Below, one piece after another: positions 616-63,989 of a stretch of 64,000 bases of DNA. Position 1 is the first letter of the stretch. Each line of letters opens with the position of its first letter. Origin of the DNA: Tubulanus polymorphus (lineage: Eukaryota > Animalia > Nemertea); contig NC_134031.1 of the NCBI RefSeq assembly GCF_964204645.1, positions 7,688,001-7,752,000 of the forward strand, written 5' to 3'. Position numbers and translations under genes: made by a program. The notes beneath the pieces were generated by a model that was not told the DNA's origin, did no database searches, and was given only the letters and a program-made list of their open reading frames with translations.

Positions 616-928
616 CATAGAATAGCTCGAATTTCATAGTATGTTTCTGCTGTTAAAATTAAGCTACAGTCGACAAAAGGTAGAATCTATTTTAGTAACT
701 TAGCGCGCATCCGGTAGATCAGACCACAGCGTCATCCGCTCATGGACGGATGTGGAAACACGATTCGAGTCGCTTGAAAATGGCTTATCTTGCTACCGTT
801 AGAATTATGTGTTTTTGTATCGACTGCACGATTCGACTTTAAACGCAACTCCTGAAAAAGAAATCGAAGCGATTGCAGACGATGTATAAGTCAACGTTCA
901 ACGTTCTCATGCCATGCCACAGTCAAAG

Positions 929-1330
929 GAATACCTGCCGATTTTATTGTTGATCGTTTTCGATACTTTTCTGATAATAAAACTGCGAAAAATCCAGGCT
1001 AAACGGGACGAAGATTTCACCTTGCACGGCGGTAAGGATAAGAATCGATATATCGATATGAAAGCGACTAAAATGGCGTTATCGCTCGTAGTTTTCATGC
1101 TTTTTAAAAGGCCCAGCTCTATCTCGACGATATATAATGCCATGCGAACTTGGTTTGAGAATTGTCCCCCTTTACCGGCCGATTATTGGTATTTCGGCAT
1201 AATTGTCAGTGCAATTTTTCCGCTGTTGAATTCGTCGTCATCATATTTTTTCTTGTACCGCATTGTCAACGGTATGTTTAGGGAGGTGGCTCTGAAACTC
1301 ATACGAACCGTTGTTAACGAAATGCGATGA
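929..1330 (+). pseudogene. Fragment of a rhodopsin-like (class A) peptide GPCR, TM5-TM7 plus helix 8; no N-terminal part found
   Basis: ORF 914..1330 has TM5-like YLPILLLIVFDTFLIIKLRK, TM6-like KATKMALSLVVF and TM7/H8-like LLNSSSSYFFLY...FR. This recalls invertebrate FMRFamide-receptor-like GPCRs, but TM6/TM7 look degenerate. Confidence 0.6.
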
Positions 1331-2862: not shown

Positions 2863-5800
2863 TAGAATCATGCTTTAGGCTTTAAATTGAATTCAATCTA
2901 TTTTTCATAGGAAAGCGTGATTTAAAGATTTTAGGTAAACATGATTGGAAATTGAAATTGAAAACTGAATCCGCCTGCCCTTTTTTATAATAGACAAATT
3001 CCGTCATTATAAATCAGACCATGTCCCTCCCCCCCCCCCCCCACAAATGAGAAACGAGGTGTTTTTGGCCTTAGATCTATTAACAGGGACCTTGGGATAA
3101 TGATTTCCTGGTTGTTGAGGGAAATGAAGCTCATTCAATCACCATTCATTAATTACAGTATTCTATAGTTCAAGTGGATCATGAATCATTATTCCTTTCT
3201 ACAACAGGATTATTGATTAGTTAAGAGTAATGAAATTACTAACGCATACTGTATTCTCCAGGGCAACTGTACTCCTTTATCGTAAATGTGTTATCTATAG
3301 ACAAAATGAAGATGATTTTTTTTCAATGCTTTTTATCAACGATGTTGATTTGTATGACTGATGCAGTATGCATTATTTGACAGCTGCTCAATTCTGCTTG
3401 GTGATAATGCTGCAAACCATCCGATTTCAAGTTAGGAAATATTTTCATTTATAGGTCGTCAATAATTAATCACTAAAGCCCATCAATGAATCCCTGTTAT
3501 AATCATCAAGAGAAATGTACCCAGCATCAAAAATTCATAATCTTCATCGTCAGATTTTGTTTTTAAGGCAGACATGATTATAAATTATCGGACAGCGTGG
3601 GACCGGCACGATCAACATAAAGGCGCGTTCACACTAGATTATTTAAACTAAATTCGGCCCGTTCCAATTTGAAACAGACCAAGCATTCACATTTGTAAAA
3701 AAAATGCACTCCAAATTGTTCCGTTCAATTTCAGACCGGCCCAAGTTGAGCCGACCTGAAAGACCTGTGTATGTGGACAGAAACTGGTTCCAGGTCTGTT
3801 CAAAATCGTACTCTGAAGTATGAAATATGCATGTCACAAATTCGTCATCAAGCTGATATGGTTGTCAGGTATCATATAATTTCCGTATTGCTTAGAAATT
3901 AATGCATAGGCTAGCGGATTGTTAAATTCTGCGTGTGTTTATCACGAAGTACATGTATCCGTTTTGATTGTTTTGAAAATGTCCAAGAATTTATCATAGT
4001 TTGATGTGTCCATGTATACGATGAGCTGCAATCATCAAAAATTCTTGAATAAAAACAGCCAGGGCGTCATTAATCAATAATTTAGACATAAATTACGGGG
4101 TAAATACTTATGGTGACATCTTGCAGGGCAATTCAATACTATCTGCAGCCAATTTAGCAACACGTGTGTGAACGCATACTCCTGTTTGGTCCAAATTCGG
4201 AACAGACCTATTTTGACTTAGACTGGTCTAACAAGTGGTAGCGTGAACGCTTTGTTAAATAAACAAAATCTGACGATGAACATTATGAATTTGTTCACCC
4301 TGTCCCTATGCTGTCCAACTGAATAACACAGGTTTTACTGATCTACCCTCAATTATTTAGAAGAATATAGATACATCCTTGGATGCCTGGCAAACCGGAA
4401 ACTTCGATTTTAGAAAATAGGTTTGCACAGTCTGCCCCTTGCTGGTGATATAGCCTTGATCAGGTGGAGACCATTAGGCCCGGATCAGACCCGATTCATA
4501 TTTGGTCCATGCCTAATCCTCTAAAACGATTTCAAAAGCCTAATTAAAGGCCCGTAAATCATTTTCTCGATGCTAAACGATGCCGAGACGAAGTGAGGCA
4601 GTCACATTCAGAACCAGTTAGCATTCATATGCATTTATTTTACCCATGCTAAGAATGGGTTGGCCCATACCAGCATTAGTTCTCCCATATTTGAAAACTG
4701 GTGATAGATATAAGATTAACACCGTTTTAAGTATAGGTCAAGCTTAGTTATGAGCTTAACATTCGCATGATGAAAATGAAGTTGGGTGCAGTATTGTTAT
4801 TAGTTAGTACTATATGGGATATATTGTTTTGATATTTGTATTAGGGTATATATCACTTAAATATGCTGGTGTGAGTGTTGAGCAGGTGGAATTTCAAAGA
4901 CCGCGGATCTCAAAGAATACGGGCTGTTAACATGGTTAACGGCTCTTAACGGTAAACAAGAGGCCTATAATTTTGGCCCAATATTACCGCCATCAAAATC
5001 ATGTTGCCATGGCAATGAGTAAACCCATAAAATACATCGTCCCTGTTGTTTCTGATATTGCGTAGGGCCATGTGTGTGTATGTATCCTTTGTGTTGATTA
5101 CCAACTTGAGGAGAGAAGATAACAATGTCACCAATACTTAAATTTGGTTTGCACTCACAATAATGAATTTGCTCTCAATTTCTTTCATTTTTTCTCCAAC
5201 ACAACTGAAGTGCTTGGGTACTGTTACGTTGATAACAGATTCATAGACCAGTAGCGGGCCCGATCCCAAGTTCACCACAGTTAATATGATTATAATCTAC
5301 TATATATAGAGATTGAAATGAAATTTATTTTATAAAACAATGTTTCAGACTCCTTTTAGATAGGCCATTTCATTTTGTATATGAATATATTTTATTATCA
5401 AATGGCTACGCCTGGGACTTTTGGGCTTCGTACGACCCCCTTTTCATAACTAAGTTTGATGAGTTATCATTAAATTTTTTTTTTCTTTTCTGAATCAGTA
5501 TTAAGCAAAAGAAATGTTTTTACATCTAAAAATCGTTCAAACTGCTCGAAAAATACGTTTAAGAATTCAAAGCCCTAATTAAATGAGAAGTAAAATAAAT
5601 TACTGAATTAATTTTTAAAATGTGATCATAAATGCAAACCTTGCCTGCAACCATTTATCTTCAGTAATTGATAAAAAGTATATAAAAGAAGAATGTACAA
5701 ATATTGAAAGCATCAATACTATCCGTAGTTATATATACATAACTGTTATAAATGATGGGTGAGGACGAATACCATTTATGATAATTTACTATCAGTTAAT

Positions 5801-7414
5801 AGTTGTTAAATGAAGTTCCTTCAAGCATATTTGGCCTGGACCTGGCCCGACCAAAAATGTTGAACCAGGCCCGAGCCTAATTTGGCTCGAGACCGATCCA
5901 TGCCAATGTTGTAGCCAAGGCCAAATCGTCTCTGTGTGATTGTGGCTATAGCCTTTGCTGTAGGCTATCTCGCGATTGTTTTTCTCCCCATCCAATCTCG
6001 GTTATCAGTAGTAAATCTTGGAGAGTAGAATTTGGAGCGGTGGCAATCCTTTTTAGGATCAATAAACGCCCATTGGCAGGAATGATAATGCTTAAAAGGA
6101 GCACTATCATTGTGAAAGGTAATCCTTGGCACAATCGTTGGAAGGAGGCGGGGTAATCTTCAGTTGTATACGTAATCCTAAGCAGGAGGTAATCCTGGGT
6201 AGGAGCCATCATAGTCATGCTCGGCAGGATGAGTAATCGATGGCAGGAGCCGTGTTTTCCTTGACAGAAGTTGCGATCTTTCAAATGTAGATTGTTTTCC
6301 GGGTGTGTATCATCAAAGGTCACAGGATTAAGTAAGATTTATGTTTCTGCCGTAATAGATTACATCGTTTGATAGAGAATCATCAAAAGTCAAGCATTAA
6401 TGAACTCGTAAATATCAGTACGTAGTAATGTTTGCAGATAAAAGATGAAGATCGTTGTGAATAAGGCAAAGCATGGATGCTACATGATCGGTGACAAAAT
6501 AAATGCTTACCATTGTAGTATTTCTGATTTTCAGAATCTTGCAGACCTTTGTATTGATGCATGATACAAATTGATGAGACTTCATGGAAAAAGTAGTTTT
6601 TATAACTATTTTACAAATTTGTAGTCAGTGCGAAACGTTTGGTTAATGAGGGTGGTAGGTTGTCATGATTTAGGCGAATTTGCGAGAATAATGAGGGTGG
6701 TAGGTCGTCATGATTTACACGAATTTCATGGGCTCAAACCCAACACCTGAGCCAGCCACCAAATGGATAGCAAACAACAGCTGAGGCCTCCTCAATAATG
6801 GTGAATGTTCTTAACGAAATCTGAACGGCTAATTTTGCCATCCAAGCAATTATGCATAGGACCTTACTTTTATGAAGCCAACAATTATTAGTTTGAACCA
6901 AATCAGTAATTGCGATATTCCAACATCGACAGCGGATGCTTGTTATTTTAAAAAGACAGTAGACTGCCTAACTCGGTTTTATTTGGACTGTAATGTTTCT
7001 CCCGACTTGACGGAATACCAACTCAATAGTTGAACGAATACTGACTCAATAGATAAGGGAATTAAAAGATTTATACGTTAGGGATCAGAAAATTTGTAAT
7101 GTAATTTCACTGACGTAGCTGTACATAAGTTGCTATGGTGGGGTGCCTTCCTTTGTTCATTATTCCATTCTCCAATTTCTCATGTTACCTCTCCCCCAAT
7201 ATTTACTTGACTTGACGTTGTGATCAGTGTGCTGGCCAAAAAAGCGCACAGATCATACTTCAACCGATCCGACTCCTAGCTACCAAACTGCTTCTGGGTT
7301 TATTTTGCTAGCTCGTTTTGTTGTGTTCAGTAGCGGATGAACCGAGTCATCGAAGCGTGAAAACTCTAATCGGTTTCGGTAGTCAGCACCATTTATTACT
7401 GCGTACACTATATC

Positions 7415-7897
7415 TCATTGGTTGTACCCAGGGATCGGTATGACATACGTTATATCTGTAACCACTGGCCAATCGTTCGGAGTAGAATCATCAACTGCTC
7501 GCACTTGTATTGGAACGTTCGAAATATCGCTATTTGCAGCCGCGTAGGCCGCTCGATGCGCCCCGTCGCGGATGAAATATACCCGATCTCGCACTCGTGT
7601 CACTTTAATCGGATCGGATTTTTCGTAGTCCGTCGTCCACTGTTTAATGTTGGCGTAAAAGATGTCCTCGCTATGTTCGACGTAACCGATTGCACGAGTC
7701 TCCATCCTGATGTAATGGCTGTATTCGGTACCCGGTGGTCGTTGCTCGAGATTACTCTGCAGAACGGCGCGGGCAAATCGGTAGTGCGGCGTGTAGCGTA
7801 TGGGAACAATCAGGGGCGAAACGCAATATCGTCCAACCTGTTCCGGCAGCCTCTCCCAGAAACGGAAGTAGATTTCATCAATATTCAGGCTCAACAT
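7415..7897 (-). CDS. Exon 2 of a small ParB/sulfiredoxin-fold-like protein (160 aa from this exon)
   Basis: Acceptor CTTCTATTTTCAG|ATG. The open frame contains PIKV...YFIRDGAHRAA...VPIQV, matching the ParB N-terminal/Srx pattern PIxV...YxIxDGxHRxxA...VPV. TGA at 7415; AATAAA at 7397-7392. Confidence 0.75.
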   Translation of the reverse strand: MLSLNIDEIYFRFWERLPEQVGRYCVSPLIVPIRYTPHYRFARAVLQSNLEQRPPGTEYSHYIRMETRAIGYVEHSEDIFYANIKQWTTDYEKSDPIKVTRVRDRVYFIRDGAHRAAYAAANSDISNVPIQVRAVDDSTPNDWPVVTDITYVIPIPGYNQ

Positions 7898-7993
7898 CTG
7901 AAAATAGAAGAATAGCGATTCATTTTCAAACACATTATTTTCGACGTCTCCAGACTGTTTTGAACACTAGTTATTCACCAGATGGTGTATTAC

Positions 7994-8026
7994 CCTGAGG
8001 TTGTTAATGGTAGCGTGGTTACACAT
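7994..8026 (-). CDS. Exon 1 of ParB/Srx-fold-like gene (MCNHATINNLR); may instead be 5' UTR
   Basis: ATG at 8026 opens 33 nt ending AGG|GTAATA, in frame with exon 2. A TATA-like TTATAAG lies at 8061-8055. Confidence 0.55.
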
Positions 8027-8054
8027 CTTGAAATAAAGCGCCACTATGGCTGCC

Positions 8055-8061
8055 CTTATAA
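8055..8061 (-). promoter_or_regulatory. Candidate TATA box of the ParB-like gene
   Basis: TTATAAG followed by GGC, about 30 nt upstream of the exon 1 ATG. Confidence 0.4.
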
Positions 8062-11000
8062 CTACTAATAGTTGTGCAAAACTTGGTCACACCAAGGCAA
8101 ACTTTGGTTATCTGAGTTAGTTGACCAGTTGCGAATGTGAAGCCGAATGTCAGTTAGTCCGAACTAGCCCGAAATAGTCGTTGAGCACGGTCGCTTGAGT
8201 TCAAACCTTGTTCCAAGATGGCTAGATCTTTCATATGTGTTAAAATCAGTGCATGTGAATGCTTACTGGTTCTGGATGTGACTTGTTTATATGTGCATGT
8301 GCTCTCTAATTAGGCCTGGGTCAAATTCGGTCCAAGCCAATATCACCCCAGCCAATTCATTTTGAGTGATCACTGCCTATTCGAAGGTCACGCTAATGTT
8401 GTAAAGGTCATGCTAATGTTGTAGGAGGTCTGTTGCTTCATTTGGACAGGATAAATGTTTTTTTTCCATAGTAGGCCCTCCCCTCCACTCAAAAATTCAT
8501 TCACTTATATTTGTGACATATATTTGTGAATGTCTCTCAATAGGTCTGAAGCCTAAAAATCATGATTCGGAAATACAGAGTAGGCGTATACTTTTATTTG
8601 CAGCCTGCCTTATTTAAAGAAAATTTAGTACGGTGGAAACTTGTTTTATTGACCTTGGATATAACGATAACAACCCTAGAATATTGTCCAAAATAGGAAA
8701 ATCTTCAATAATTTTTTATTGGATATAGGCTAATGAACTATCATTGGTAATAACGCACAGATTTTCTGCCGGCCCCCTGAAGTTTGTATTAACAAGGTCC
8801 CACTTATAAAAAGATGTCACCCTGATCATGATTTCTATATTCAAATGTCCATAAGTCACACGAACTATTATGACACATGTTTTTACAATTGACTAGTGAA
8901 ATGTTCATCTATTGATAATATTTACTATCTTACTAGATGAAATACTTAATATGACGTTGAATTACTGAGTATGAGGCTAATATGTTTTTTATTCATAATC
9001 AACATGTTGGATTTAGTCAATACGTATTCACAGAAGTGCTGGTGATTAATTTGTGTCTTTGAACGATGTCATTTAATGTTTGGTCAGTCATCACATGTCA
9101 ATAAACTGTGCTCATGATTTTGTATATAAAGATGATGTGAACTCATCATTCTTATTCTGGGTTATGGTAAAGGGTGTACATACACGTCATTGAATGAATG
9201 ACATCCTTTACTTTTTGAGTGGGTGTTAGTTTCCTAGCCAGCCTACCTCAATAACACCCACCCCAATAAGTCACTGGTTGAAAGGTTGTTTGAATGAATT
9301 GCAACCGAATTTCCCAGTTATGTACTTCAATTTGAATAAGAAATTCTGTAAATTCGACCGCCGATCACACAACTGTATCTGTACTTCGATTTTGCGATTT
9401 TAAAATATAACCTCCTTTTTCACCCCCAGCAGATATGTTGGGTTTGTAAGGGACACTCAAAATCTACCAATCACATAGATAACATGGTCAATCCCTTTTT
9501 TAAGATCAAATAACACCCACCTGTTACACATATGCTGAGCCTTGCTTCCAATGTTTTGATGCAACTATAGCTGTGAGTTGTTGGTCTGCACAGACTTCTC
9601 TCTGGATGGAAATTTATTTTTCTGTACCATTCCCTTTCTGTGCTTTACTGTCTCTTCTATGACCTGATAGAATTTCCTCGTATATTATTCAATCATATAT
9701 TTACTTTTTTTTGTTCCGCACACGTGTTAATCAATTCGAGCTTCAGCTGTACATAGAGCCATCTGTTTGCTAAAGCCCGGTGCACACTAGGCATTGCAAC
9801 CAACGGTTAGATTTTCTATCGTCGGCAACTTTTGTTTAAATCGCTGACATAACAATCGCTATCTGGTTGCCCGTGCCCATATAACTACTATTGTGGCTGA
9901 ATCGCGGTAGGAAAAGTTGTGCCACTTCACTTCAAGGGGATGCCATTTTGTGAATGGCGGTATGATTTTTATCTTGACGCTGTTTTACATGAGATTTGAA
10001 GGGACTTGTTGCTAGTCAGTGCGCACACAAGGCAACTGAAGGAAATTTACTGCCGATTGTGTTGCCAAATATCTAGCATTCTAAATACTGAGCAATCTTG
10101 TCACCAGAAGCTATTTGTCTATACACTAGGTGATAGAAAATTTGTCACTGTCGACGAAATTCGCCGACTAATCGTCATAACATCGCTTATTGTGTGGTGG
10201 GCACCACACGCAAGCTAAAAAATACATATGCAATGCATGCTGCCTCAAATTTGGCCGGTATGCAGGTGATTTTTCCCAGTGCATTTTGCCATTTTGCCGA
10301 AGATTCTACATGTTCTATGATTCTCGAAGCTGCGCCGCACATCACGCTGCTTTCATTGCCAATGCCCAAAACTGATGATTGCAATTATTATCAATTTTGG
10401 AAAAGAAAGCTGCTGATTTATTACATGAGTATTACTCTCTTAACTGTTGCATGTGGGATTACTAGGATTAATTAAATCATAATTTTTTCTCATTGCAAGA
10501 CCCACAATCTGAATTTTGTGATGGAGAATTGTGATAAGGATGATGCAAAGTTGCTTGTAAATGATGCAGATATGCAGTAAATAAGGAAACAGGGGGTTTC
10601 ATAAAGAAATTGGAAATGGAAGTACAGATCTAGTTTCATGATCGGCAGTCGAATTTACGGCAATTTTGTGATTAAATCAAAGTACATAATTGGAAATTGT
10701 AGTTTATTCATTTTAACTGGATGCTGGATATATATAACATAAGATTTTGTCACTCGCTGGTTAATCACGTCGAAGAGAATCACCGATCCTGACCGGAGGG
10801 CACAACGTTGTTTACTTTTTATAATTCATTCTGGTCCAACGAGCTGATCTGCCCAGTATCCAAGCAACGGCTTAGAAAAACAGCAGTAACTGCCAGTTTG
10901 GATCGTTTATATCGGCTATAAATCTTTGAGGTCATATACGGTAGCAATGAAACATTGAATCGGTACTGTATTCAATGATTGATCAGGTTGAGTTTGAATT

Positions 11001-11073
11001 TGAGGTGGATCTGATATGAGCCGCAGAATATTCACAACAAAAAGTCGATATTTAGATTAATCAAAGGTATTTA

Positions 11074-11355
11074 TAGCTGCGATCACACAGAGATGATTTG
11101 GCACGGGCCAAATTGACAGCATTGACCAAACCCGAGTCAAATTTGCCCGTGCCTAATTAGAGAGAGCGCTCGCACACAAACCACTCACTCGATACTAAAC
11201 AAAGCAAAGTGAGTCATCCGGAACCTGCTGCAATTCAAATGCAATCATTTGTCCTGTGCTAGAATTTGAAATTTGGCTCAGGCGTGGCCCGACATTTTTG
11301 GTTGGGCCAAACATGCTCAGGCCCATCTGCCAAAAACACTTGTGTGATCGCAGTT
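11074..11355. mobile_element. MITE of a family also seen near 3620-4250, 5840-5950, 8220-8380 and 41362-41700
   Basis: TIR AGCTGCGATCACAC / GTGTGATCGCAGTT with internal GGCCC/GGGCC and CAAATT repeats. Confidence 0.65.
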
Positions 11356-12249
11356 AAAATTCCTTTTCGGGTATACAGCCAAAACTGGTTTTCCATGAAT
11401 CGCATCATTCGCATGTAACCGTAATATCTATTCAAAGAAAACTTATGCGTAACCTAAAGTTCATGTATGACAAAACGAATAATTATCAAGGGTGTTGAGA
11501 AATGATACCTTTGCCACAGATCGAGTTGGAACACTGAAATAGATCTTACTTTAACGGAATACTTGCCGTACAGAATACATGATACAATAAGTATATAAAT
11601 ACCATCACATATACTGTAAATGTTACTGGATAACAGCTGACGGCATTGACACTATTCACCTCCGATCCTCGGCAATCCTGATCAGATTTCAGCCATTGAA
11701 ATTGAATCGGTTACAATATCATATCACGACTTTGATCGACAGTCTGGTATATATTTGATTGAGCTGTTATTCGGCTCTTCGATGTCTCTCGCCTTGGCCA
11801 GGAAAGTTTACATTCGTTATGTCAATCCCTGATGAATGAGTAGTCGATCCATTTTACGTTTATGTTAACCCTTTATATAGCAATTCATTTATCTGTTTGG
11901 TATCGAACAATGTGTCTATATTTATCCTTTAAGTTAACATTGACTCTCTCTATATATATGTATCGTGTAATTTACCTTTGCCATTCACTTAGTCATCTCC
12001 TCTGCAACGTCGTAACTGTCTTCGGTCTAGTCAGGGAGGTGGGAGTCAATTTCCTATTGATCTAGTTTGTTCCTCGGCAGCCAAGATACATTTTAAATGG
12101 TAACGGTCTGAAACATTTATCGTCGGTGTATCTATTTATTATCTGACGAAAAGTTATGTAAGAAGATGAAATTACATACATTTTTAGTTTATAAGGTTTT
12201 AATGAATACTTATGTTTTTGTATATTTTAGGCCTTCGTGTAATGGTCCG

Positions 12250-60867: not shown

Positions 60868-60965
60868 ACCATAGGAAAGGGTAAGTACTACTCGGAAATA
60901 CAAATTTTAGTTCCAAAAATTGTAATATTTCCGTCGAGTACTGTACCCTTTCCTATGGTTTTTGC
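60868..60965. repeat. DIRS internal complementary region (ICR)
   Basis: 60868-60930 is the exact reverse complement of 60647-60709 (63 bp). 60928-60965 is a variant of the terminal repeat expected to match the left end. Confidence 0.9.
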
Positions 60966-61169
60966 TAGACTAGCCTAGCACAAGGATGGTGGGAAAGGTA
61001 GATAGAAAAACCACCGCTCAAACGCAAGGTAAGAGGGAAAAAGAGAGCACTTACCCAAGCACGGAATGGAGCACTGTAGCACAGGATAGACCGGTTGGCC
61101 ACAGTGAGTCCGTCCAGCTCAGGGGCCCCCCCAGAATTTTGCGAAATTAATACTTGCAGATATAAGCCC

Positions 61170-63834
61170 AAACTATGTACCCATCGGGCCACTGTGTCCC
61201 GCGAAATATCCCCCTTTAGGTGATCCAGCAGCGGAATAAATAACCGCTCCCGTGAACCCCTCCGTGAAGCAGAGCGATCTAAATAGAAACACAACGCCCG
61301 CACAGGACATAAAGTCCTGTCCGGGATGCCCGGTTCCACTCGATGTTTTAGGGCTTCAATTCGCCATTGACGCCCAACCGAGCCTGGTCGTTGGTTCTTT
61401 GCCAAAAATTCCAAAGCAGGCCGCAGCGAAACAAATTCATTCGCTGGCCCAAAGACAATATGACCTTGTCGGACTGAAAGCGCATGAATCTCAGAGCGAC
61501 GGGCCGAGCAAGCCAAGAACAGCAAAAATACAGTCTTTTTTGACAAATTTGCAAATGACGCTGCCGAAAGAGGTTCAAATGGAGCCTCCATTAACTTCTT
61601 CAAAATTACAGACAGATCCCATGGTGGAACTGTCCTTGTTACCGAGGCCGGGAAATAGAAAAACCTGCAACCAGCTGGGATATCCGATGATCCCCTGCTA
61701 CATTTGGCCATCCAGAAGCACGCAATGTATGAGAAATCGCGGAGCGGTAACCTTTAATAGTTATGACCTGCAAACCTTTTACTACAAATAGGTGCAGTAA
61801 AAAATCTGCCAATTGAGCTACAGAGGGTGAGCATGGATCAATTTCCCCTGCAGCACACCAATCCGCAAAATGACTCCATTTGGCATCGTAAACGGTACTT
61901 GTTGATGGCCGCTTAGATCCTGCAATAAAGGAGGCAGCCTGTTCTGAAAAGCCTGAAGCTGACAAGGATCGCTGGACAATGGCCAGGCGAGCAGATTTAA
62001 CCACTGGCTGTTTGGATGATGCCGAAAGTTCCCCCGAGACAGAAGCGATGGGAAATTCGGAGGAATCCTGGGGTTGTCGCACAGCAGGTTGAGAAGTGGT
62101 AGGAACCATTTCTGAGCCGGCCAACATGGTGCTACCAGAACTATGTTGCAATTGACTGATCTCTCTATTTGATCCAGTAAGCGCGGCAGGACTGGTGTGG
62201 GCGGGAACGCATACGCATGCATCCCCGACCAGTCCAGAGAGAAGGCATCGACCCCCCACGCTTCCGCGTCTGGAAACGGGGACACAAACAGAGGACACCT
62301 CCGATTGCACCGGGTGGCAAACAGATCCAGCAGCGGATTGCCAAAAATGCCCCGAACCCGATCGGCTACTTCTTGGTGGAGAACCCATTCTGTCGCAATA
62401 GCCTGACCTCGACGAGACAGAGCATCGGCCATCACGTTCCTTTTCCCTGCTAAATGTGCCACAGTCAGGGACACGCCCTTTGTCTGGCACCAAAGAAGAA
62501 TTTTGGCCGACAGACCTGTGAGGGTTTCTGAGTGAGTGCCCCCTTGGTTCTGAAGGTAAGCCCTCACTGTTGAATTGTCTGTGGCTAACCAAACGTGGTG
62601 GCCCTCCACTCTCCTGTGAAAGAACTTCAGGGCCTTCCACACGGCCAGCATTTCTAGGAAATTTATGTGGTTGGTGGCCTCGTAGCGAGACCATCTCCCG
62701 GCTTTGACTCGGTTCTCCAGATGTGCCCCCCATCCTTGGTGACTGGCATCCGTGAATACACGAACTGGAGCCTCTAACGGGGCTAGTGACACCCCGAGCC
62801 GAAGATTCGTAGTTGCCGCCCACCACTGAAGATCCGGACTTAGATCGGTTGGAGGTACGGGAATCAAGGCCTCCCAGTTGCCCTTCGACTGAGACCAGAA
62901 GCCCTTCCAATATGGTTGCAAGCGCCTGCTTTTGAGGCGGCCTAAGGGCACCACCAGACCCATGGAGCTGATAGAGCCTAGAAGCCGTGACCAGTAACGA
63001 GCTGTTCTCGGGGTTGTGGACACTCCCGCTACAGCTTCTTGAAGTTTGGCTACTCGAACCATAGACGGAAAGACTTTGCCGATTCGGGGATCGAAGTCCA
63101 TGCCGAGATAAGTGAACTGTTGGGCCGGCGTCAACTGAGATTTTTCCCTGTTTACGCGGAACCCTAGCTGATGGACTAGGTCCAAGACTGAGGCCATTGC
63201 CTCCCGACATTCCTGAGCCGAATTCGCGACTATTAACCAGTCGTCGAGGTAAACGAACAGTCGAACACCCCTTGACTGAAGTACCTTCTGAACTGACTTG
63301 ACCAACTTGGTGAAAACCCACGGGGCCGTACTGAGGCCAAATGGAAGAGACCTGAATTGGAACTGGCGGCCTTTCCACTTTATCCTGAGAAATCGCCGAG
63401 ATTTTGGGTGAATTGGAACCTGAAAGTAAGCATCTTTCAGGTCCAATGAAGCCGCCCATTGACCCGGACGGAGCCCTTGAATCACGTCCTTGGGCTTGGT
63501 CATCCGGAACCTTGGAATGTCTAGGTGCCAATTGAGGGATGACAGACCTATCACTGTCCGTTGACCCCCTGTGGCCTTTGGTACCATGAATATTCGAGAA
63601 AACCAGCCGGGAGAAGTTTCGTTGCAAACTGGTTCTATCGCTCCCTTCTCTGCCAGTTCCTTGAGAGCCGGAGAGATTAAGGCCTCCTGACCTGGTTTTG
63701 GCCGCATGTCGGGAGGTGACCTCATCAGGCGCGGTCGCCTTAGGAAACGGAGACGGTAGCCACGAGAGACGACCCGGGAGGGCCAACCGTCTCCAAAGAG
63801 GTCGGACCAGTGGGTTGCTGCCTGCTGCAGACAA
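61170..63834 (-). pseudogene. DIRS tyrosine recombinase ORF, frameshifted and C-terminally truncated
   Basis: YDAKWSHFADWC...TIKGYRSAI in ORF 61639..63834, continuing in another frame as PPWDL...ARRSEIHAL...LCPVRAL...ISRDTVARWV. No HxxR or catalytic Tyr segment is recognisable afterwards. Confidence 0.85.
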
Positions 63835-63989
63835 CCTCCCACTTGTCCCAAGAATTCATTTCGAGTTTTTCCGAAAGGAAGAGCCCCTTTTTGGAGCCTT
63901 CCCCTTGCCTCGATACGAACCGGAACTGTTACGACCGGACGAGGCTTGACACGATTGTTGAAGTTGCGCGCTAGTTCTCCAACCGGCAT
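61818..63989 (-). CDS. DIRS pol: reverse transcriptase, RNase H and DAM-methyltransferase-like domain
   Basis: LDLKDAYFQV, LPFGLSTAP and YLDD (RT); FTDAS, HINFLE, TDN and NVMADALSR (RNase H); DLFA...DAFSLDW...YAFPP (methyltransferase-like). True start uncertain. Confidence 0.93.
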   Translation of the reverse strand: MPVGELARNFNNRVKPRPVVTVPVRIEARGRLQKGALPFGKTRNEFLGQVGGCLQQAATHWSDLFGDGWPSRVVSRGYRLRFLRRPRLMRSPPDMRPKPGQEALISPALKELAEKGAIEPVCNETSPGWFSRIFMVPKATGGQRTVIGLSSLNWHLDIPRFRMTKPKDVIQGLRPGQWAASLDLKDAYFQVPIHPKSRRFLRIKWKGRQFQFRSLPFGLSTAPWVFTKLVKSVQKVLQSRGVRLFVYLDDWLIVANSAQECREAMASVLDLVHQLGFRVNREKSQLTPAQQFTYLGMDFDPRIGKVFPSMVRVAKLQEAVAGVSTTPRTARYWSRLLGSISSMGLVVPLGRLKSRRLQPYWKGFWSQSKGNWEALIPVPPTDLSPDLQWWAATTNLRLGVSLAPLEAPVRVFTDASHQGWGAHLENRVKAGRWSRYEATNHINFLEMLAVWKALKFFHRRVEGHHVWLATDNSTVRAYLQNQGGTHSETLTGLSAKILLWCQTKGVSLTVAHLAGKRNVMADALSRRGQAIATEWVLHQEVADRVRGIFGNPLLDLFATRCNRRCPLFVSPFPDAEAWGVDAFSLDWSGMHAYAFPPTPVLPRLLDQIERSVNCNIVLVAPCWPAQKWFLPLLNLLCDNPRIPPNFPSLLSRGNFRHHPNSQWLNLLAWPLSSDPCQLQAFQNRLPPLLQDLSGHQQVPFTMPNGVILRIGVLQGKLIHAHPL

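What the first reader, a model, noticed from the sequence alone, without database searches (positions are those of the whole stretch)
7392..8061. Complete two-exon ParB/sulfiredoxin-fold-like gene of non-animal type: candidate domesticated horizontal transfer
Seen: on the - strand, a TATA-like box (8061-8055), a 33-nt in-frame first exon, a 96-nt GT-AG intron (7993-7898), an uninterrupted 160-codon exon and AATAAA about 18 nt after the stop, all within ~670 bp. The protein has PIKV...YFIRDGAHRAAYAA...VPIQV. Known: this is the ParB N-terminal/Srx signature. Animal sulfiredoxin has FGGCHR with a catalytic Cys, whereas DGxHR versions occur in prokaryotic and viral ParB-like nucleotide-binding proteins and in SerK/SbnI serine kinases. 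Inference: a Cys-less stand-alone ParB-like enzyme gained from a microbe or large virus, now with eukaryotic expression signals, lying antisense to GPSM2 upstream or in its 5' intron. It sits among host MITEs on a clearly animal contig, which argues against simple contamination.
Basis: partly seen in the sequence, partly recalled or inferred. Interest (0 to 1): 0.85.

Follow-up and report, generated by a model that had tools for sequence, protein, structure and literature searches.

The report
Bacterial-type ParB/Srx-fold gene in a worm
An animal (ribbon-worm) chromosome carries one intact, transcribed and spliced gene for a small protein whose only relatives are rare bacterial proteins of the ParB/sulfiredoxin fold, so it is very likely a gene captured from bacteria; what it does is unknown.

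Summary
The 160-codon ORF (window 7415-7897, minus strand) is real and single-copy in the 268-Mb genome. Assembled contigs of public runs confirm the acceptor at 7898/7897. The donor they join to it lies at 9521/9520, so the intron is 1,623 nt and GT-AG on the ORF's strand. Exon 1 is non-coding. The contigs run past the proposed AATAAA.

Pfam, NCBIfam, PHROGs and PADLOC find nothing. An exhaustive HMMER search finds about 20 small relatives at no more than 43% identity. Every one whose genomic context could be read lies on a bacterial contig, in a mobile-element or toxin-antitoxin island or a polysaccharide gene cluster. The family occurs in 3 of 401 Planctomycetota genomes. A fish "hit" is a repeat artefact.

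The family profile matches the DGxHR core of the serine kinase SbnI. A confident AlphaFold model (pLDDT 87) returns only ParB/Srx-fold proteins as top matches, with weak scores. The worm protein keeps 28 of 29 family-conserved positions, and its base composition matches host exons.

Horizontal transfer and the ParB/Srx fold are supported. It is not a sulfiredoxin, not a ParB clamp, and not a proven SerK/SbnI. Translation, function and date of transfer are untested. Interest is moderate.

The parts
7415..7897 (-). Coding sequence: 160 codons plus TGA, entirely within exon 2. The ATG is the first base of the exon.
   Evidence: ORF listed. Single copy in the genome. Homology to the bacterial family down to E 1e-19. 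Covered by contigs of X2, X3 and X4.
7898..9520 (-). 1,623-nt GT-AG intron in the 5' untranslated region. It contains a host high-copy dispersed repeat at about 9330-9400.
   Evidence: The X2 contig joins 7897 to 9521; the join is absent from genome run X1. Splice-site sequences read. The repeat has 933 first-look candidates in the genome.
9521..9648 (-). Exon 1, minimal extent, non-coding. It holds two upstream ATGs, at 9630 and 9531. The second opens a 5-codon uORF that overlaps the main ATG after splicing.
   Evidence: X2 contig record 9; sequence. The transcription start is not determined.
7097..7414 (-). 3' untranslated region, minimal extent. Transcript contigs run through the AATAAA at 7397-7392.
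   Evidence: X2 contig reaches 7194; X3 and X4 contigs cover 7097-7404. The poly(A) site is not determined.
7553..7567 (-). Codons 111-115, D-G-A-H-R: the ParB/Srx signature at the start of the core helix.
   Evidence: Aligned to DGVHR of SbnI. G112 is invariant; H114 and R115 are at least 90% conserved in the family.
7778..7792 (-). Codons 36-40, T-P-H-Y-R: the family-specific conserved motif after the second strand. The active-site role is my inference.
   Evidence: T36, P37 and H38 are at least 90% conserved.
7994..8061 (-). The sequence is present but its use is not supported.
   Evidence: No 7994/7897 junction in any contig. X3 and X4 contigs run unspliced to 8004. Contigs show presence, not absence.

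Best explanation
This is a single-copy animal gene of bacterial origin. It encodes a 160-residue stand-alone domain of the ParB/sulfiredoxin fold. The protein belongs to a small, unannotated family that is otherwise seen, wherever context could be read, in bacteria, on mobile or variable islands and in polysaccharide gene clusters.

Shown: the gene lies on a chromosome-scale contig, head-to-head with GPSM2. It is transcribed from its own strand. It has acquired a 1.6-kb spliceosomal intron in its 5' UTR, and its base composition matches host exons.

Inferred mechanism: like the other small enzymes of this fold (sulfiredoxin, the serine kinases SerK and SbnI), it binds a nucleoside di- or triphosphate at the N-terminus of the DGAHR helix. 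It then transfers or hydrolyses a phosphate. The family-specific residues T36-P37-H38, R40, Y59, Y62, E66 and H75 would form the substrate side of the pocket. With no HTH or dimerisation domain it is unlikely to be a DNA clamp.

My odds: real, expressed host gene 0.9; bacterial origin 0.8; ParB/Srx fold 0.85; nucleotide-dependent phosphotransfer or NTPase activity about 0.35-0.4.
For: Reality and residence:
- One copy in G000, on contig C7 of 21.6 Mb.
- The GPSM2 first coding exon lies at about 12.24 kb on the + strand.
- X1 contigs are continuous from host flank into the gene. Sample S2 carries its own variants at 7319 and at 7652. By my codon count the 7652 change is synonymous, GCC to GCG at codon 82.
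- The upstream flank is single-copy, and the intron holds a host repeat.

Expression: there is a GT-AG junction on the ORF's strand, and X2 coverage is confined to the gene.

Origin:
- 21 true relatives at no more than 43% identity.
- Bacterial contexts: an EPS cluster; PIN/HipA toxin-antitoxin genes, an integrase and a relaxase; integrases and a transposase; a ParA-like gene; a high-GC contig next to a long bacterial-style ORF, not annotated by any tool.
- A Pirellulaceae MAG carries a copy, and the family is in 3 of 401 Planctomycetota genomes.
- One of those Planctomycetota copies sits among glycosyltransferase genes.

Fold.

Constraint: 28 of 29 columns that are at least 70% conserved in the other members are kept, against 44% overall identity to the family consensus.

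Composition: ORF GC 0.50, GC3 0.54 and CpG o/e 1.5. Host actin, HSP70 and GPSM2 exons show the same range.
Against: - No Pfam, NCBIfam, PHROGs or PADLOC model matches, and PF02195 finds nothing in the genome.
- Structural scores are weak: best Foldseek E 0.06 and best VIA-align Z 5.2. The fold call rests on consistency, not on strength.
- The kinds of runs X2-X4 are not on record. I infer they are RNA.
- Two upstream ATGs and a weak start context (C at -3, T at +4) make translation uncertain.
- No orthologue exists for a dN/dS test.
- The worm protein sits on a long, unresolved branch, so no donor can be named.
- Bacterial contexts are heterogeneous and give no conserved partner.
- No biochemical evidence exists for any member.
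Confidence: 0.65

Rival explanations
1. Transferred gene that is now a neutral relic. The transcript would be a non-coding by-product, for instance of a bidirectional GPSM2 promoter, and the ORF would be intact only because the transfer is recent or by luck.
For: Two uORFs, one overlapping the main ATG, and a weak start context. There are no orthologues or paralogues to show selection. A same-species run that may be RNA, from 2015, holds next to none of the sequence's words.
Against: The 160-codon frame is open. 28 of 29 family-conserved positions are kept although identity to any relative is at most 43%. Composition fully matches host exons, which argues for long residence, and a neutral ORF would not stay open over long residence. 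The one coding variant seen is synonymous by my count (n = 1, little weight).
Confidence: 0.18
2. The protein is a ParB-like nuclease or toxin-type effector, as in Osa and phage or plasmid 'ParB-like nuclease' proteins. It would act on DNA, not as a small-molecule or protein phosphotransferase.
For: Several bacterial relatives sit in toxin-antitoxin, integrase or plasmid islands. One relative is fused to a mannose-binding B_lectin module, an architecture reminiscent of lectin-like bacteriocins; that resemblance is from my own knowledge. Osa and ParB-like nuclease proteins are among the structural matches.
Against: The best sequence-level match is to the kinase SbnI. Two contexts are glycan-biosynthesis clusters. 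No adjacent immunity-like partner is conserved. The worm protein has no evident signal peptide by eye.
Confidence: 0.2
3. Contamination or misassembly: a bacterial fragment wrongly placed in the animal assembly.
For: All relatives with readable context are bacterial. Local GC (0.50) is higher than the flanks (0.37).
Against: A contig of run X1 is continuous from host flank through the gene. A second sample carries the gene with its own variants. There is a GT-AG intron holding a host repeat with 933 candidate copies. The GC rise equals that of host exons.
Confidence: 0.02
4. Ancient eukaryotic gene inherited vertically and lost almost everywhere, or a gene delivered by a virus (phage or giant virus) instead of a bacterium.
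For: The Atlas feature search lists phage-dominated clusters first, and structural neighbours include a 336-aa phage protein (TM by query 0.62-0.66). Several relatives come from short contigs of unknown organism.
Against: No true eukaryotic relative among 1.84 billion cluster representatives, which stand for about 15 billion proteins; the fish hit fails the family profile. No match in IMG/VR, GenBank phages or plasmids. The contexts that could be read are cellular bacterial ones.
Confidence: 0.08

Closest known systems
SbnI / SerK free L-serine kinases (PDB 5uje, 5ujd, 6nr6; 5x0b, 5x0g)
   Same: ParB/Srx core: strand PIxV, hairpin, D-G-x-H-R at the helix start, then a strand with PV/PI. SbnI is the best profile-to-sequence match (E 0.0022). 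Structural Z is 4.5 and 4.0. Both are small-molecule enzymes found in biosynthetic clusters; that last point is from my own knowledge.
   Different: Those enzymes have about 240-255 residues with an extra C-terminal domain (target lengths; the domain reading is from my own knowledge). This protein has 160 residues and one domain. The match covers only about 50 residues. The family has TPHYR where the kinases are reported to use a catalytic Glu (own knowledge), and it has a roughly 25-residue helical insertion.
Sulfiredoxin (animal and plant Srx; PDB 1yzs, 6ky4, 7lj1)
   Same: Top structural matches: Z 5.2 and 5.1 with 83-87 residues aligned; Foldseek ranks 1-9 are mostly Srx. It is a small stand-alone domain, and the -HR of the motif is kept.
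   Different: No Cys at the FGGCHR position (this protein reads R-D-G-A-H-R), so it cannot perform Srx chemistry. Sequence identity is 13-17%. The Pfam ParB_N model, which I recall also covers Srx, does not match.
ParB / Noc / KorB CTP-dependent DNA clamps
   Same: Same N-terminal fold. Noc, ParB and KorB are among the top hits.
   Different: No GERRxRA-type arginine box, no HTH DNA-binding domain and no C-terminal dimerisation domain. It is 160 residues against the roughly 180-220-residue C-terminally truncated chains matched.
Osa and phage/plasmid 'ParB-like nuclease' stand-alone proteins
   Same: Small ParB/Srx-fold accessory proteins of mobile elements. Structural matches at Z 3.4 and in BFVD.
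   Different: No detectable sequence relationship. No match in phage or plasmid collections.
Other bacterial genes captured by this worm's genome (CapA-type, WlbA/WlbB-type), noted by this scan
   Same: Same genome and same pattern: a bacterial-type ORF with a gained intron among animal genes (other agents' notes, unchecked here).
   Different: Unrelated proteins. Those have named families and multiple copies; this one is single-copy and belongs to an unannotated family.

Membership tests
ParB/Srx-fold superfamily | Core fold of strands and helices, with the nucleotide-binding helix preceded by a hairpin | tested here: met
   AlphaFold model has pLDDT 87.4 and pTM 0.84. The top 32 Foldseek PDB rows and top 10 VIA-align rows are all of this fold, though weak (best E 0.06, best Z 5.2). 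BFVD and Atlas agree.
ParB/Srx-fold superfamily | (D/G)GxHR-type motif at the helix N-terminus, followed by a strand with a conserved P-I/V | tested here: met
   D111-G-A-H-R115, then V-P-I-Q-V. It aligns to DGVHR...VPVQ of SbnI. G112, H114 and R115 are conserved in the family.
Pfam PF02195 ParB_N | Score above the family's gathering threshold | tested here: not met
   No PF02195 hit for this protein or for any of 23 family members, even at E 1-10. No hit in the genome's six frames.
Sulfiredoxin | Catalytic Cys in FGGCHR | tested here: not met
   The equivalent residue is Ala113. The only Cys is C25.
ParB/Noc/KorB CTPase clamps | Arginine-rich GERRxRA box plus an HTH DNA-binding domain | tested here: not met
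   The motif reads DGAHRAAYA. The protein ends about 25 residues after the core, with no HTH in the model or in Pfam.
SerK/SbnI serine kinases | Two-domain architecture of about 240-255 residues, with a C-terminal domain completing the active site | tested here: not met
   The protein has 160 residues and a single domain. The profile match covers only the 50-residue core.
SerK/SbnI serine kinases | Catalytic acidic residue in the N-terminal loop, and kinase activity | not testable with these tools
   The family has TPHYR in the comparable loop. Equivalence and activity need a structure with ligand and an assay.
Horizontally acquired animal gene | Physically integrated in host chromosome | tested here: met
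   21.6-Mb contig. Contigs are continuous into host flanks. The gene is present in two samples. A host repeat lies in the intron, and GPSM2 lies about 2.6 kb from exon 1.
Horizontally acquired animal gene | Relatives confined to the donor domain, with no vertical pattern | tested here: met
   There are 21 relatives. Every context that could be read is bacterial. The fish hit is an artefact. The family is in 3 of 401 Planctomycetota genomes. Caveat: several relatives come from short contigs of unknown organism.
Horizontally acquired animal gene | Eukaryotic expression (spliced transcript) | tested here: met
   A GT-AG junction 9521/7897 on the ORF's strand in an X2 contig, absent from the genome run. 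The kind of run is not on record; RNA is my inference.
Horizontally acquired animal gene | Purifying selection in the host lineage (orthologues, dN/dS) | not testable with these tools
   No other nemertean genome could be searched. The only indirect evidence is that 28 of 29 conserved positions are retained.

The most novel reading that the evidence does not exclude
The worm makes and uses this protein as a working enzyme of a so-far uncharacterised ParB/Srx family, a nucleotide-dependent kinase-like modifier of a small molecule or glycan. It would be part of a wider toolkit of captured bacterial sugar and capsule genes in this genome (the scan also notes CapA-type and WlbA/WlbB-type genes), perhaps serving mucus or surface chemistry. 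Two bacterial relatives sit in polysaccharide clusters.
Probability: 0.1. Interest if true: 0.8.

Novelty: new member of a known kind. Interest (0 to 1): 0.5.

Why it matters
Animals are known to have one ParB/Srx-fold enzyme, sulfiredoxin (my own knowledge). This would be a second, unrelated and bacterial-type one. It has hallmarks of long residence: a gained intron and host-like composition. It also flags a small protein family with sharp conserved motifs (LYFRFW, TPHYR, HS..F..NI..W, DGAHRAAFA) that no library annotates, and whose chemistry is unknown in bacteria too. The worm copy is easy to test: 160 residues, one coding exon. Together with the other bacterial-type genes noted in this genome, it adds to the case that this ribbon worm has taken up several bacterial genes.

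Tried and rejected
- Pfam, NCBIfam, PHROGs and PADLOC on the protein and on 23 family members gave nothing meaningful.
- phmmer of the single protein against PDB sequences gave nothing.
- The single-sequence AlphaFold model was useless (pLDDT 37). Only the model built with the family alignment was used.
- The Lates calcarifer 1,894-aa 'hit' was rejected. It is a repeat protein with seven weak stretches, and the family profile does not match it.
- A compositional signature of foreignness was rejected. The ORF's GC, GC3 and CpG o/e fall inside the range of host exons.
- A duplicated promoter or leader was rejected. The 17-nt repeat at 8051-8067 and 9874-9890, plus a shared ATGTGTAAC, has no extended similarity around it.
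- Transposon membership was rejected. The protein and its upstream flank are single-copy, and there are no flanking terminal repeats.
- A donor clade could not be named; the tree leaves the worm protein on a long unresolved branch.
- Pattern scans of GTDB genomes and IMG/VR with the closest subgroup found nothing. Two scans failed for lack of a conserved stretch.
- tblastn against plasmids and phages found nothing.
- Rfam on 5000-12000 found nothing.
- Literature searches found no description of this gene or family.
Full report
**What is in the sequence.**
- On the minus strand there is an open frame from 7933 to 7415. Its first ATG is at 7897 and gives 160 codons.
Only the exon-2 ORF (window:7418-7897:-) was sent to search tools.
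The one read-laying run used 5,601 letters (window 5200-10800) and stayed clear of the GPSM2 coding exons.

**Transcript evidence.** Four public runs of the same organism hold the stretch.
- X1 (219 Mb of contigs, sample S1) behaves like the genome run. Its contigs are continuous from host flank (5200) through the gene to 8034.
- X2 (sample S2) has zero depth in the flanks. It carries one 832-nt contig covering 7194-7897 and then 9521-9648. The skipped 7898-9520 reads CT..AC on the + strand, which is GT..AG on the ORF's strand. X1 lacks this join.
- I therefore read X2 as RNA. Its kind is not on record, so this is an inference.
- The resulting gene has a non-coding first exon (at least 9521-9648), a 1,623-nt intron, and a second exon that begins exactly with the ATG.
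- The donor (CAG|GTGGGT) and the acceptor (pyrimidine tract then CAG) fit the consensus.
Its donor at 7994/7993 is not seen in any contig. X3 and X4 contigs run unspliced through 7801-8004, which could be pre-mRNA or an alternative start. Contigs cannot prove absence.
- Contigs continue past the AATAAA to 7194 and 7097, so that signal is at least not the only 3' end.
- Exon 1 has two upstream ATGs, at 9630 and 9531. The second gives a 5-codon uORF that overlaps the main ATG after splicing. The main ATG has C at -3 and T at +4. Translation is therefore not assured.
- Sample S2 differs from the assembly at 7319 (3' UTR) and at 7652. By my own codon count the 7652 change is GCC to GCG in codon 82, which is synonymous.

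**Host residence.**
- The gene is single-copy in the 268-Mb, 77-contig assembly, at C7:7,695,415-7,695,897 on a 21.6-Mb contig.
- The first coding exon of a GPSM2/LGN-type gene starts at about 12,240 on the + strand. The identification is by eye, from the TPR and GoLoco sequences. The two genes are head-to-head, unless an upstream GPSM2 5' exon makes this gene nested. This was not resolved.
- The intron contains a dispersed host repeat at about 9330-9400, with 933 first-look candidates and a depth of 12,434 in X1.
- The 156 nt upstream of the ORF are single-copy, and nothing marks a transposon.
- The ORF's GC (0.50), GC3 (0.54) and CpG o/e (1.51) stand out from the flanks (GC 0.37, CpG 0.5-0.9). 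They fall inside the range of host actin, HSP70 and GPSM2 exons (GC3 0.44-0.67, CpG 0.83-1.81).
- So there is no foreign compositional signature. The gene looks fully adapted to the host.
- Earlier agents of this scan name the animal as the ribbon worm Tubulanus polymorphus. I did not verify this.

**Relatives.**
- Curated libraries give nothing.
- An exhaustive phmmer search covered 1.84 billion cluster representatives, which stand for about 15 billion proteins. It gave 22 proteins at E up to 1e-3, and the best after self is 43% identical.
- One of these, a 1,894-aa fish protein, is a false positive. It is a tandem-repeat protein scored over seven weak stretches, and it does not match the family profile.
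- The others have 130-253 residues, plus one 467-residue fusion to a B_lectin module.
- They share sharp motifs: LYFRFW, TPHYRFA, Y..Y..E, HS..F..NI..W and PI.V....Y.I.DGAHRAAFA.A.
- Wherever context could be read it is bacterial:
  - an exopolysaccharide cluster with Wza/Wzc/Wzx/Wzy-type genes, glycosyltransferases and methyltransferases;
  - an island with PIN and HipA toxin-antitoxin genes, an integrase and a TrwC relaxase;
  - integrase or transposase neighbourhoods;
  - a ParA-like and AcrVA2-like neighbourhood;
  - a 68%-GC contig on which the gene follows a long bacterial-style ORF that no tool annotated;
  - a contig with a thiol-activated cytolysin and an nSTAND NTPase.
- In species-representative genomes, a Pirellulaceae MAG carries a broken copy.
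- The family profile hits 3 of 401 Planctomycetota genomes. In one of them the domain ends a 298-aa protein that sits between GT8 and GT1-type glycosyltransferases and an FkbM methyltransferase.
- There is no match in IMG/VR, GenBank phages or PLSDB plasmids.
- In a maximum-likelihood tree the worm protein sits on a long branch (1.28) at an unresolved node. No donor can be named.
- The family is thus a rare, patchy bacterial accessory gene with a single animal member. Transfer from a bacterium into the worm lineage is the economical reading.

**Fold.**
- A profile of 23 members searched against all PDB sequences puts three SbnI chains first, the best at E 0.0022. They align over PI.V....Y.v.DG.HR...A...PV.
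- With that alignment AlphaFold gives a confident model: mean pLDDT 87.4 and pTM 0.84. Its elements are three N-terminal strands, three helices, a hairpin (97-111), the DGAHR helix (113-126) and a strand (130-134).
- The first 32 Foldseek rows against the PDB are all ParB/Srx-fold proteins: sulfiredoxin, Noc, SerK, ParB, KorB, PadC and SbnI. E-values are only 0.06-0.8, over about 66 columns.
- An independent all-against-all VIA-align search finds only 20 chains at Z of 2 or more. The top ten are all of this fold. Examples are Srx at Z 5.2 (87 residues, rmsd 3.1), KorB 5.0, SbnI 4.5, SerK 4.0, Osa 3.4 and Spo0J 3.1.
- The viral library and the ESM Atlas agree. The Atlas adds two closer whole-domain neighbours (TM by query 0.62-0.67): a 336-aa phage protein cluster and a 394-aa bacterial cluster carrying a class-I methyltransferase domain.
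- Each score is weak, but their unanimity and the motif-level sequence match make the fold assignment sound.
- Membership in narrower families fails:
  - the Pfam ParB_N model does not match;
  - there is no sulfiredoxin Cys;
  - there is no ParB arginine box or HTH domain;
  - there is no second domain as in SerK and SbnI.

**Constraint.** Leaving the worm protein out, 29 alignment columns are at least 70% conserved among 20 non-redundant members. The worm protein has the consensus residue at 28 of them, and the exception is F to Y. Its overall identity to the consensus is 44%. This fits continued constraint. It cannot separate divergence in bacteria from divergence in the worm.

**How it probably works.**
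- Shown: the fold, the motif and the single-domain architecture.
- Inferred: in this fold the helix that starts with (D/G)GxHR holds the nucleotide phosphates. Small stand-alone or two-domain members are phosphotransfer enzymes (Srx, SerK, SbnI) or nucleases. This rests on my own knowledge of those families.
- I therefore favour nucleotide binding at D111-R115. A phosphate would be transferred or hydrolysed with the help of the family-specific T36-P37-H38, R40, Y59, Y62, E66 and H75.
- The two polysaccharide-cluster contexts and the methyltransferase-fused structural neighbour lean towards a small-molecule or glycan substrate.
- The mobile-island contexts and the lectin fusion keep a nuclease or toxin-like role alive.
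- My odds are about 0.35-0.4 for phosphotransfer or NTPase, 0.2 for nuclease or toxin-like, 0.18 for no present function, and the rest for other roles.

**Verdict.**
The ORF, acceptor and motifs are right. The first exon, intron length and poly(A) use are not.
A viral route and 'domestication' in the functional sense remain unshown.
- The scan has noted other bacterial-type genes in this genome (unchecked). This is one more case of a known phenomenon, involving a protein family that nobody has described.

Noticed in passing
window 9330-9400 (inside the 5' UTR intron): Very high-copy dispersed repeat. It has 933 first-look candidates in the genome at about 89-95% identity and a depth of 12,434 in run X1. 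It is also abundant in runs X2-X4, so copies are probably transcribed somewhere.
   Followed up: partly
window 5894-6328: This segment is single-copy apart from its first 60 nt or so. Contigs of X3 (depth 60) and X4 (15.6) cover it strongly, but X2 does not cover it at all. It holds a 125-aa ORF (5946-6323, minus strand) with no Pfam match. It may be an unannotated exon or a non-coding RNA downstream of the ParB-like gene.
   Followed up: partly
window 8005-8093: Contigs of the genome run X1 break and fork here: there are two alternative short contigs over 8005-8062 and 8005-8093.
   Followed up: no
window 60965-63989, minus strand: GC-rich (0.49-0.55) retroelement. It has a 723-aa reverse-transcriptase/RNase H-like ORF (with a YLDD motif) and a 248-aa ORF that looks like a tyrosine recombinase, so it appears DIRS-like. 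Judged by eye only.
   Followed up: no
window 914-1330, plus strand: ORF with a weak match to 7TM GPCR families (Srw at E 1.4e-4, 7tm_1 at E 0.005). It is probably the last exon of a chemoreceptor-type GPCR gene.
   Followed up: partly
L014 2723-4126 (protein P0020): A bacterial family member of 467 aa fuses the ParB/Srx-like domain to a mannose-binding B_lectin module and repeated C-terminal segments. It lies on a contig with ParA-like and AcrVA2-like genes.
   Followed up: partly
L033 6373-10983 (genome G015, Planctomycetota) and L007 4116-17983: In two unrelated bacteria the family's gene lies inside glycan-biosynthesis clusters with glycosyltransferases and methyltransferases (FkbM-type in L033; Methyltransf_13/23-type in L007). 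The G015 match is weak (E 2e-5).
   Followed up: partly
L027 6001-6392 = G001:C18:103767-104170 (Pirellulaceae MAG JAWKTL010000018.1): The only family copy found by pattern scan in species-representative genomes matches in two separate pieces (model positions 7-32 and 79-156). It looks degraded.
   Followed up: partly
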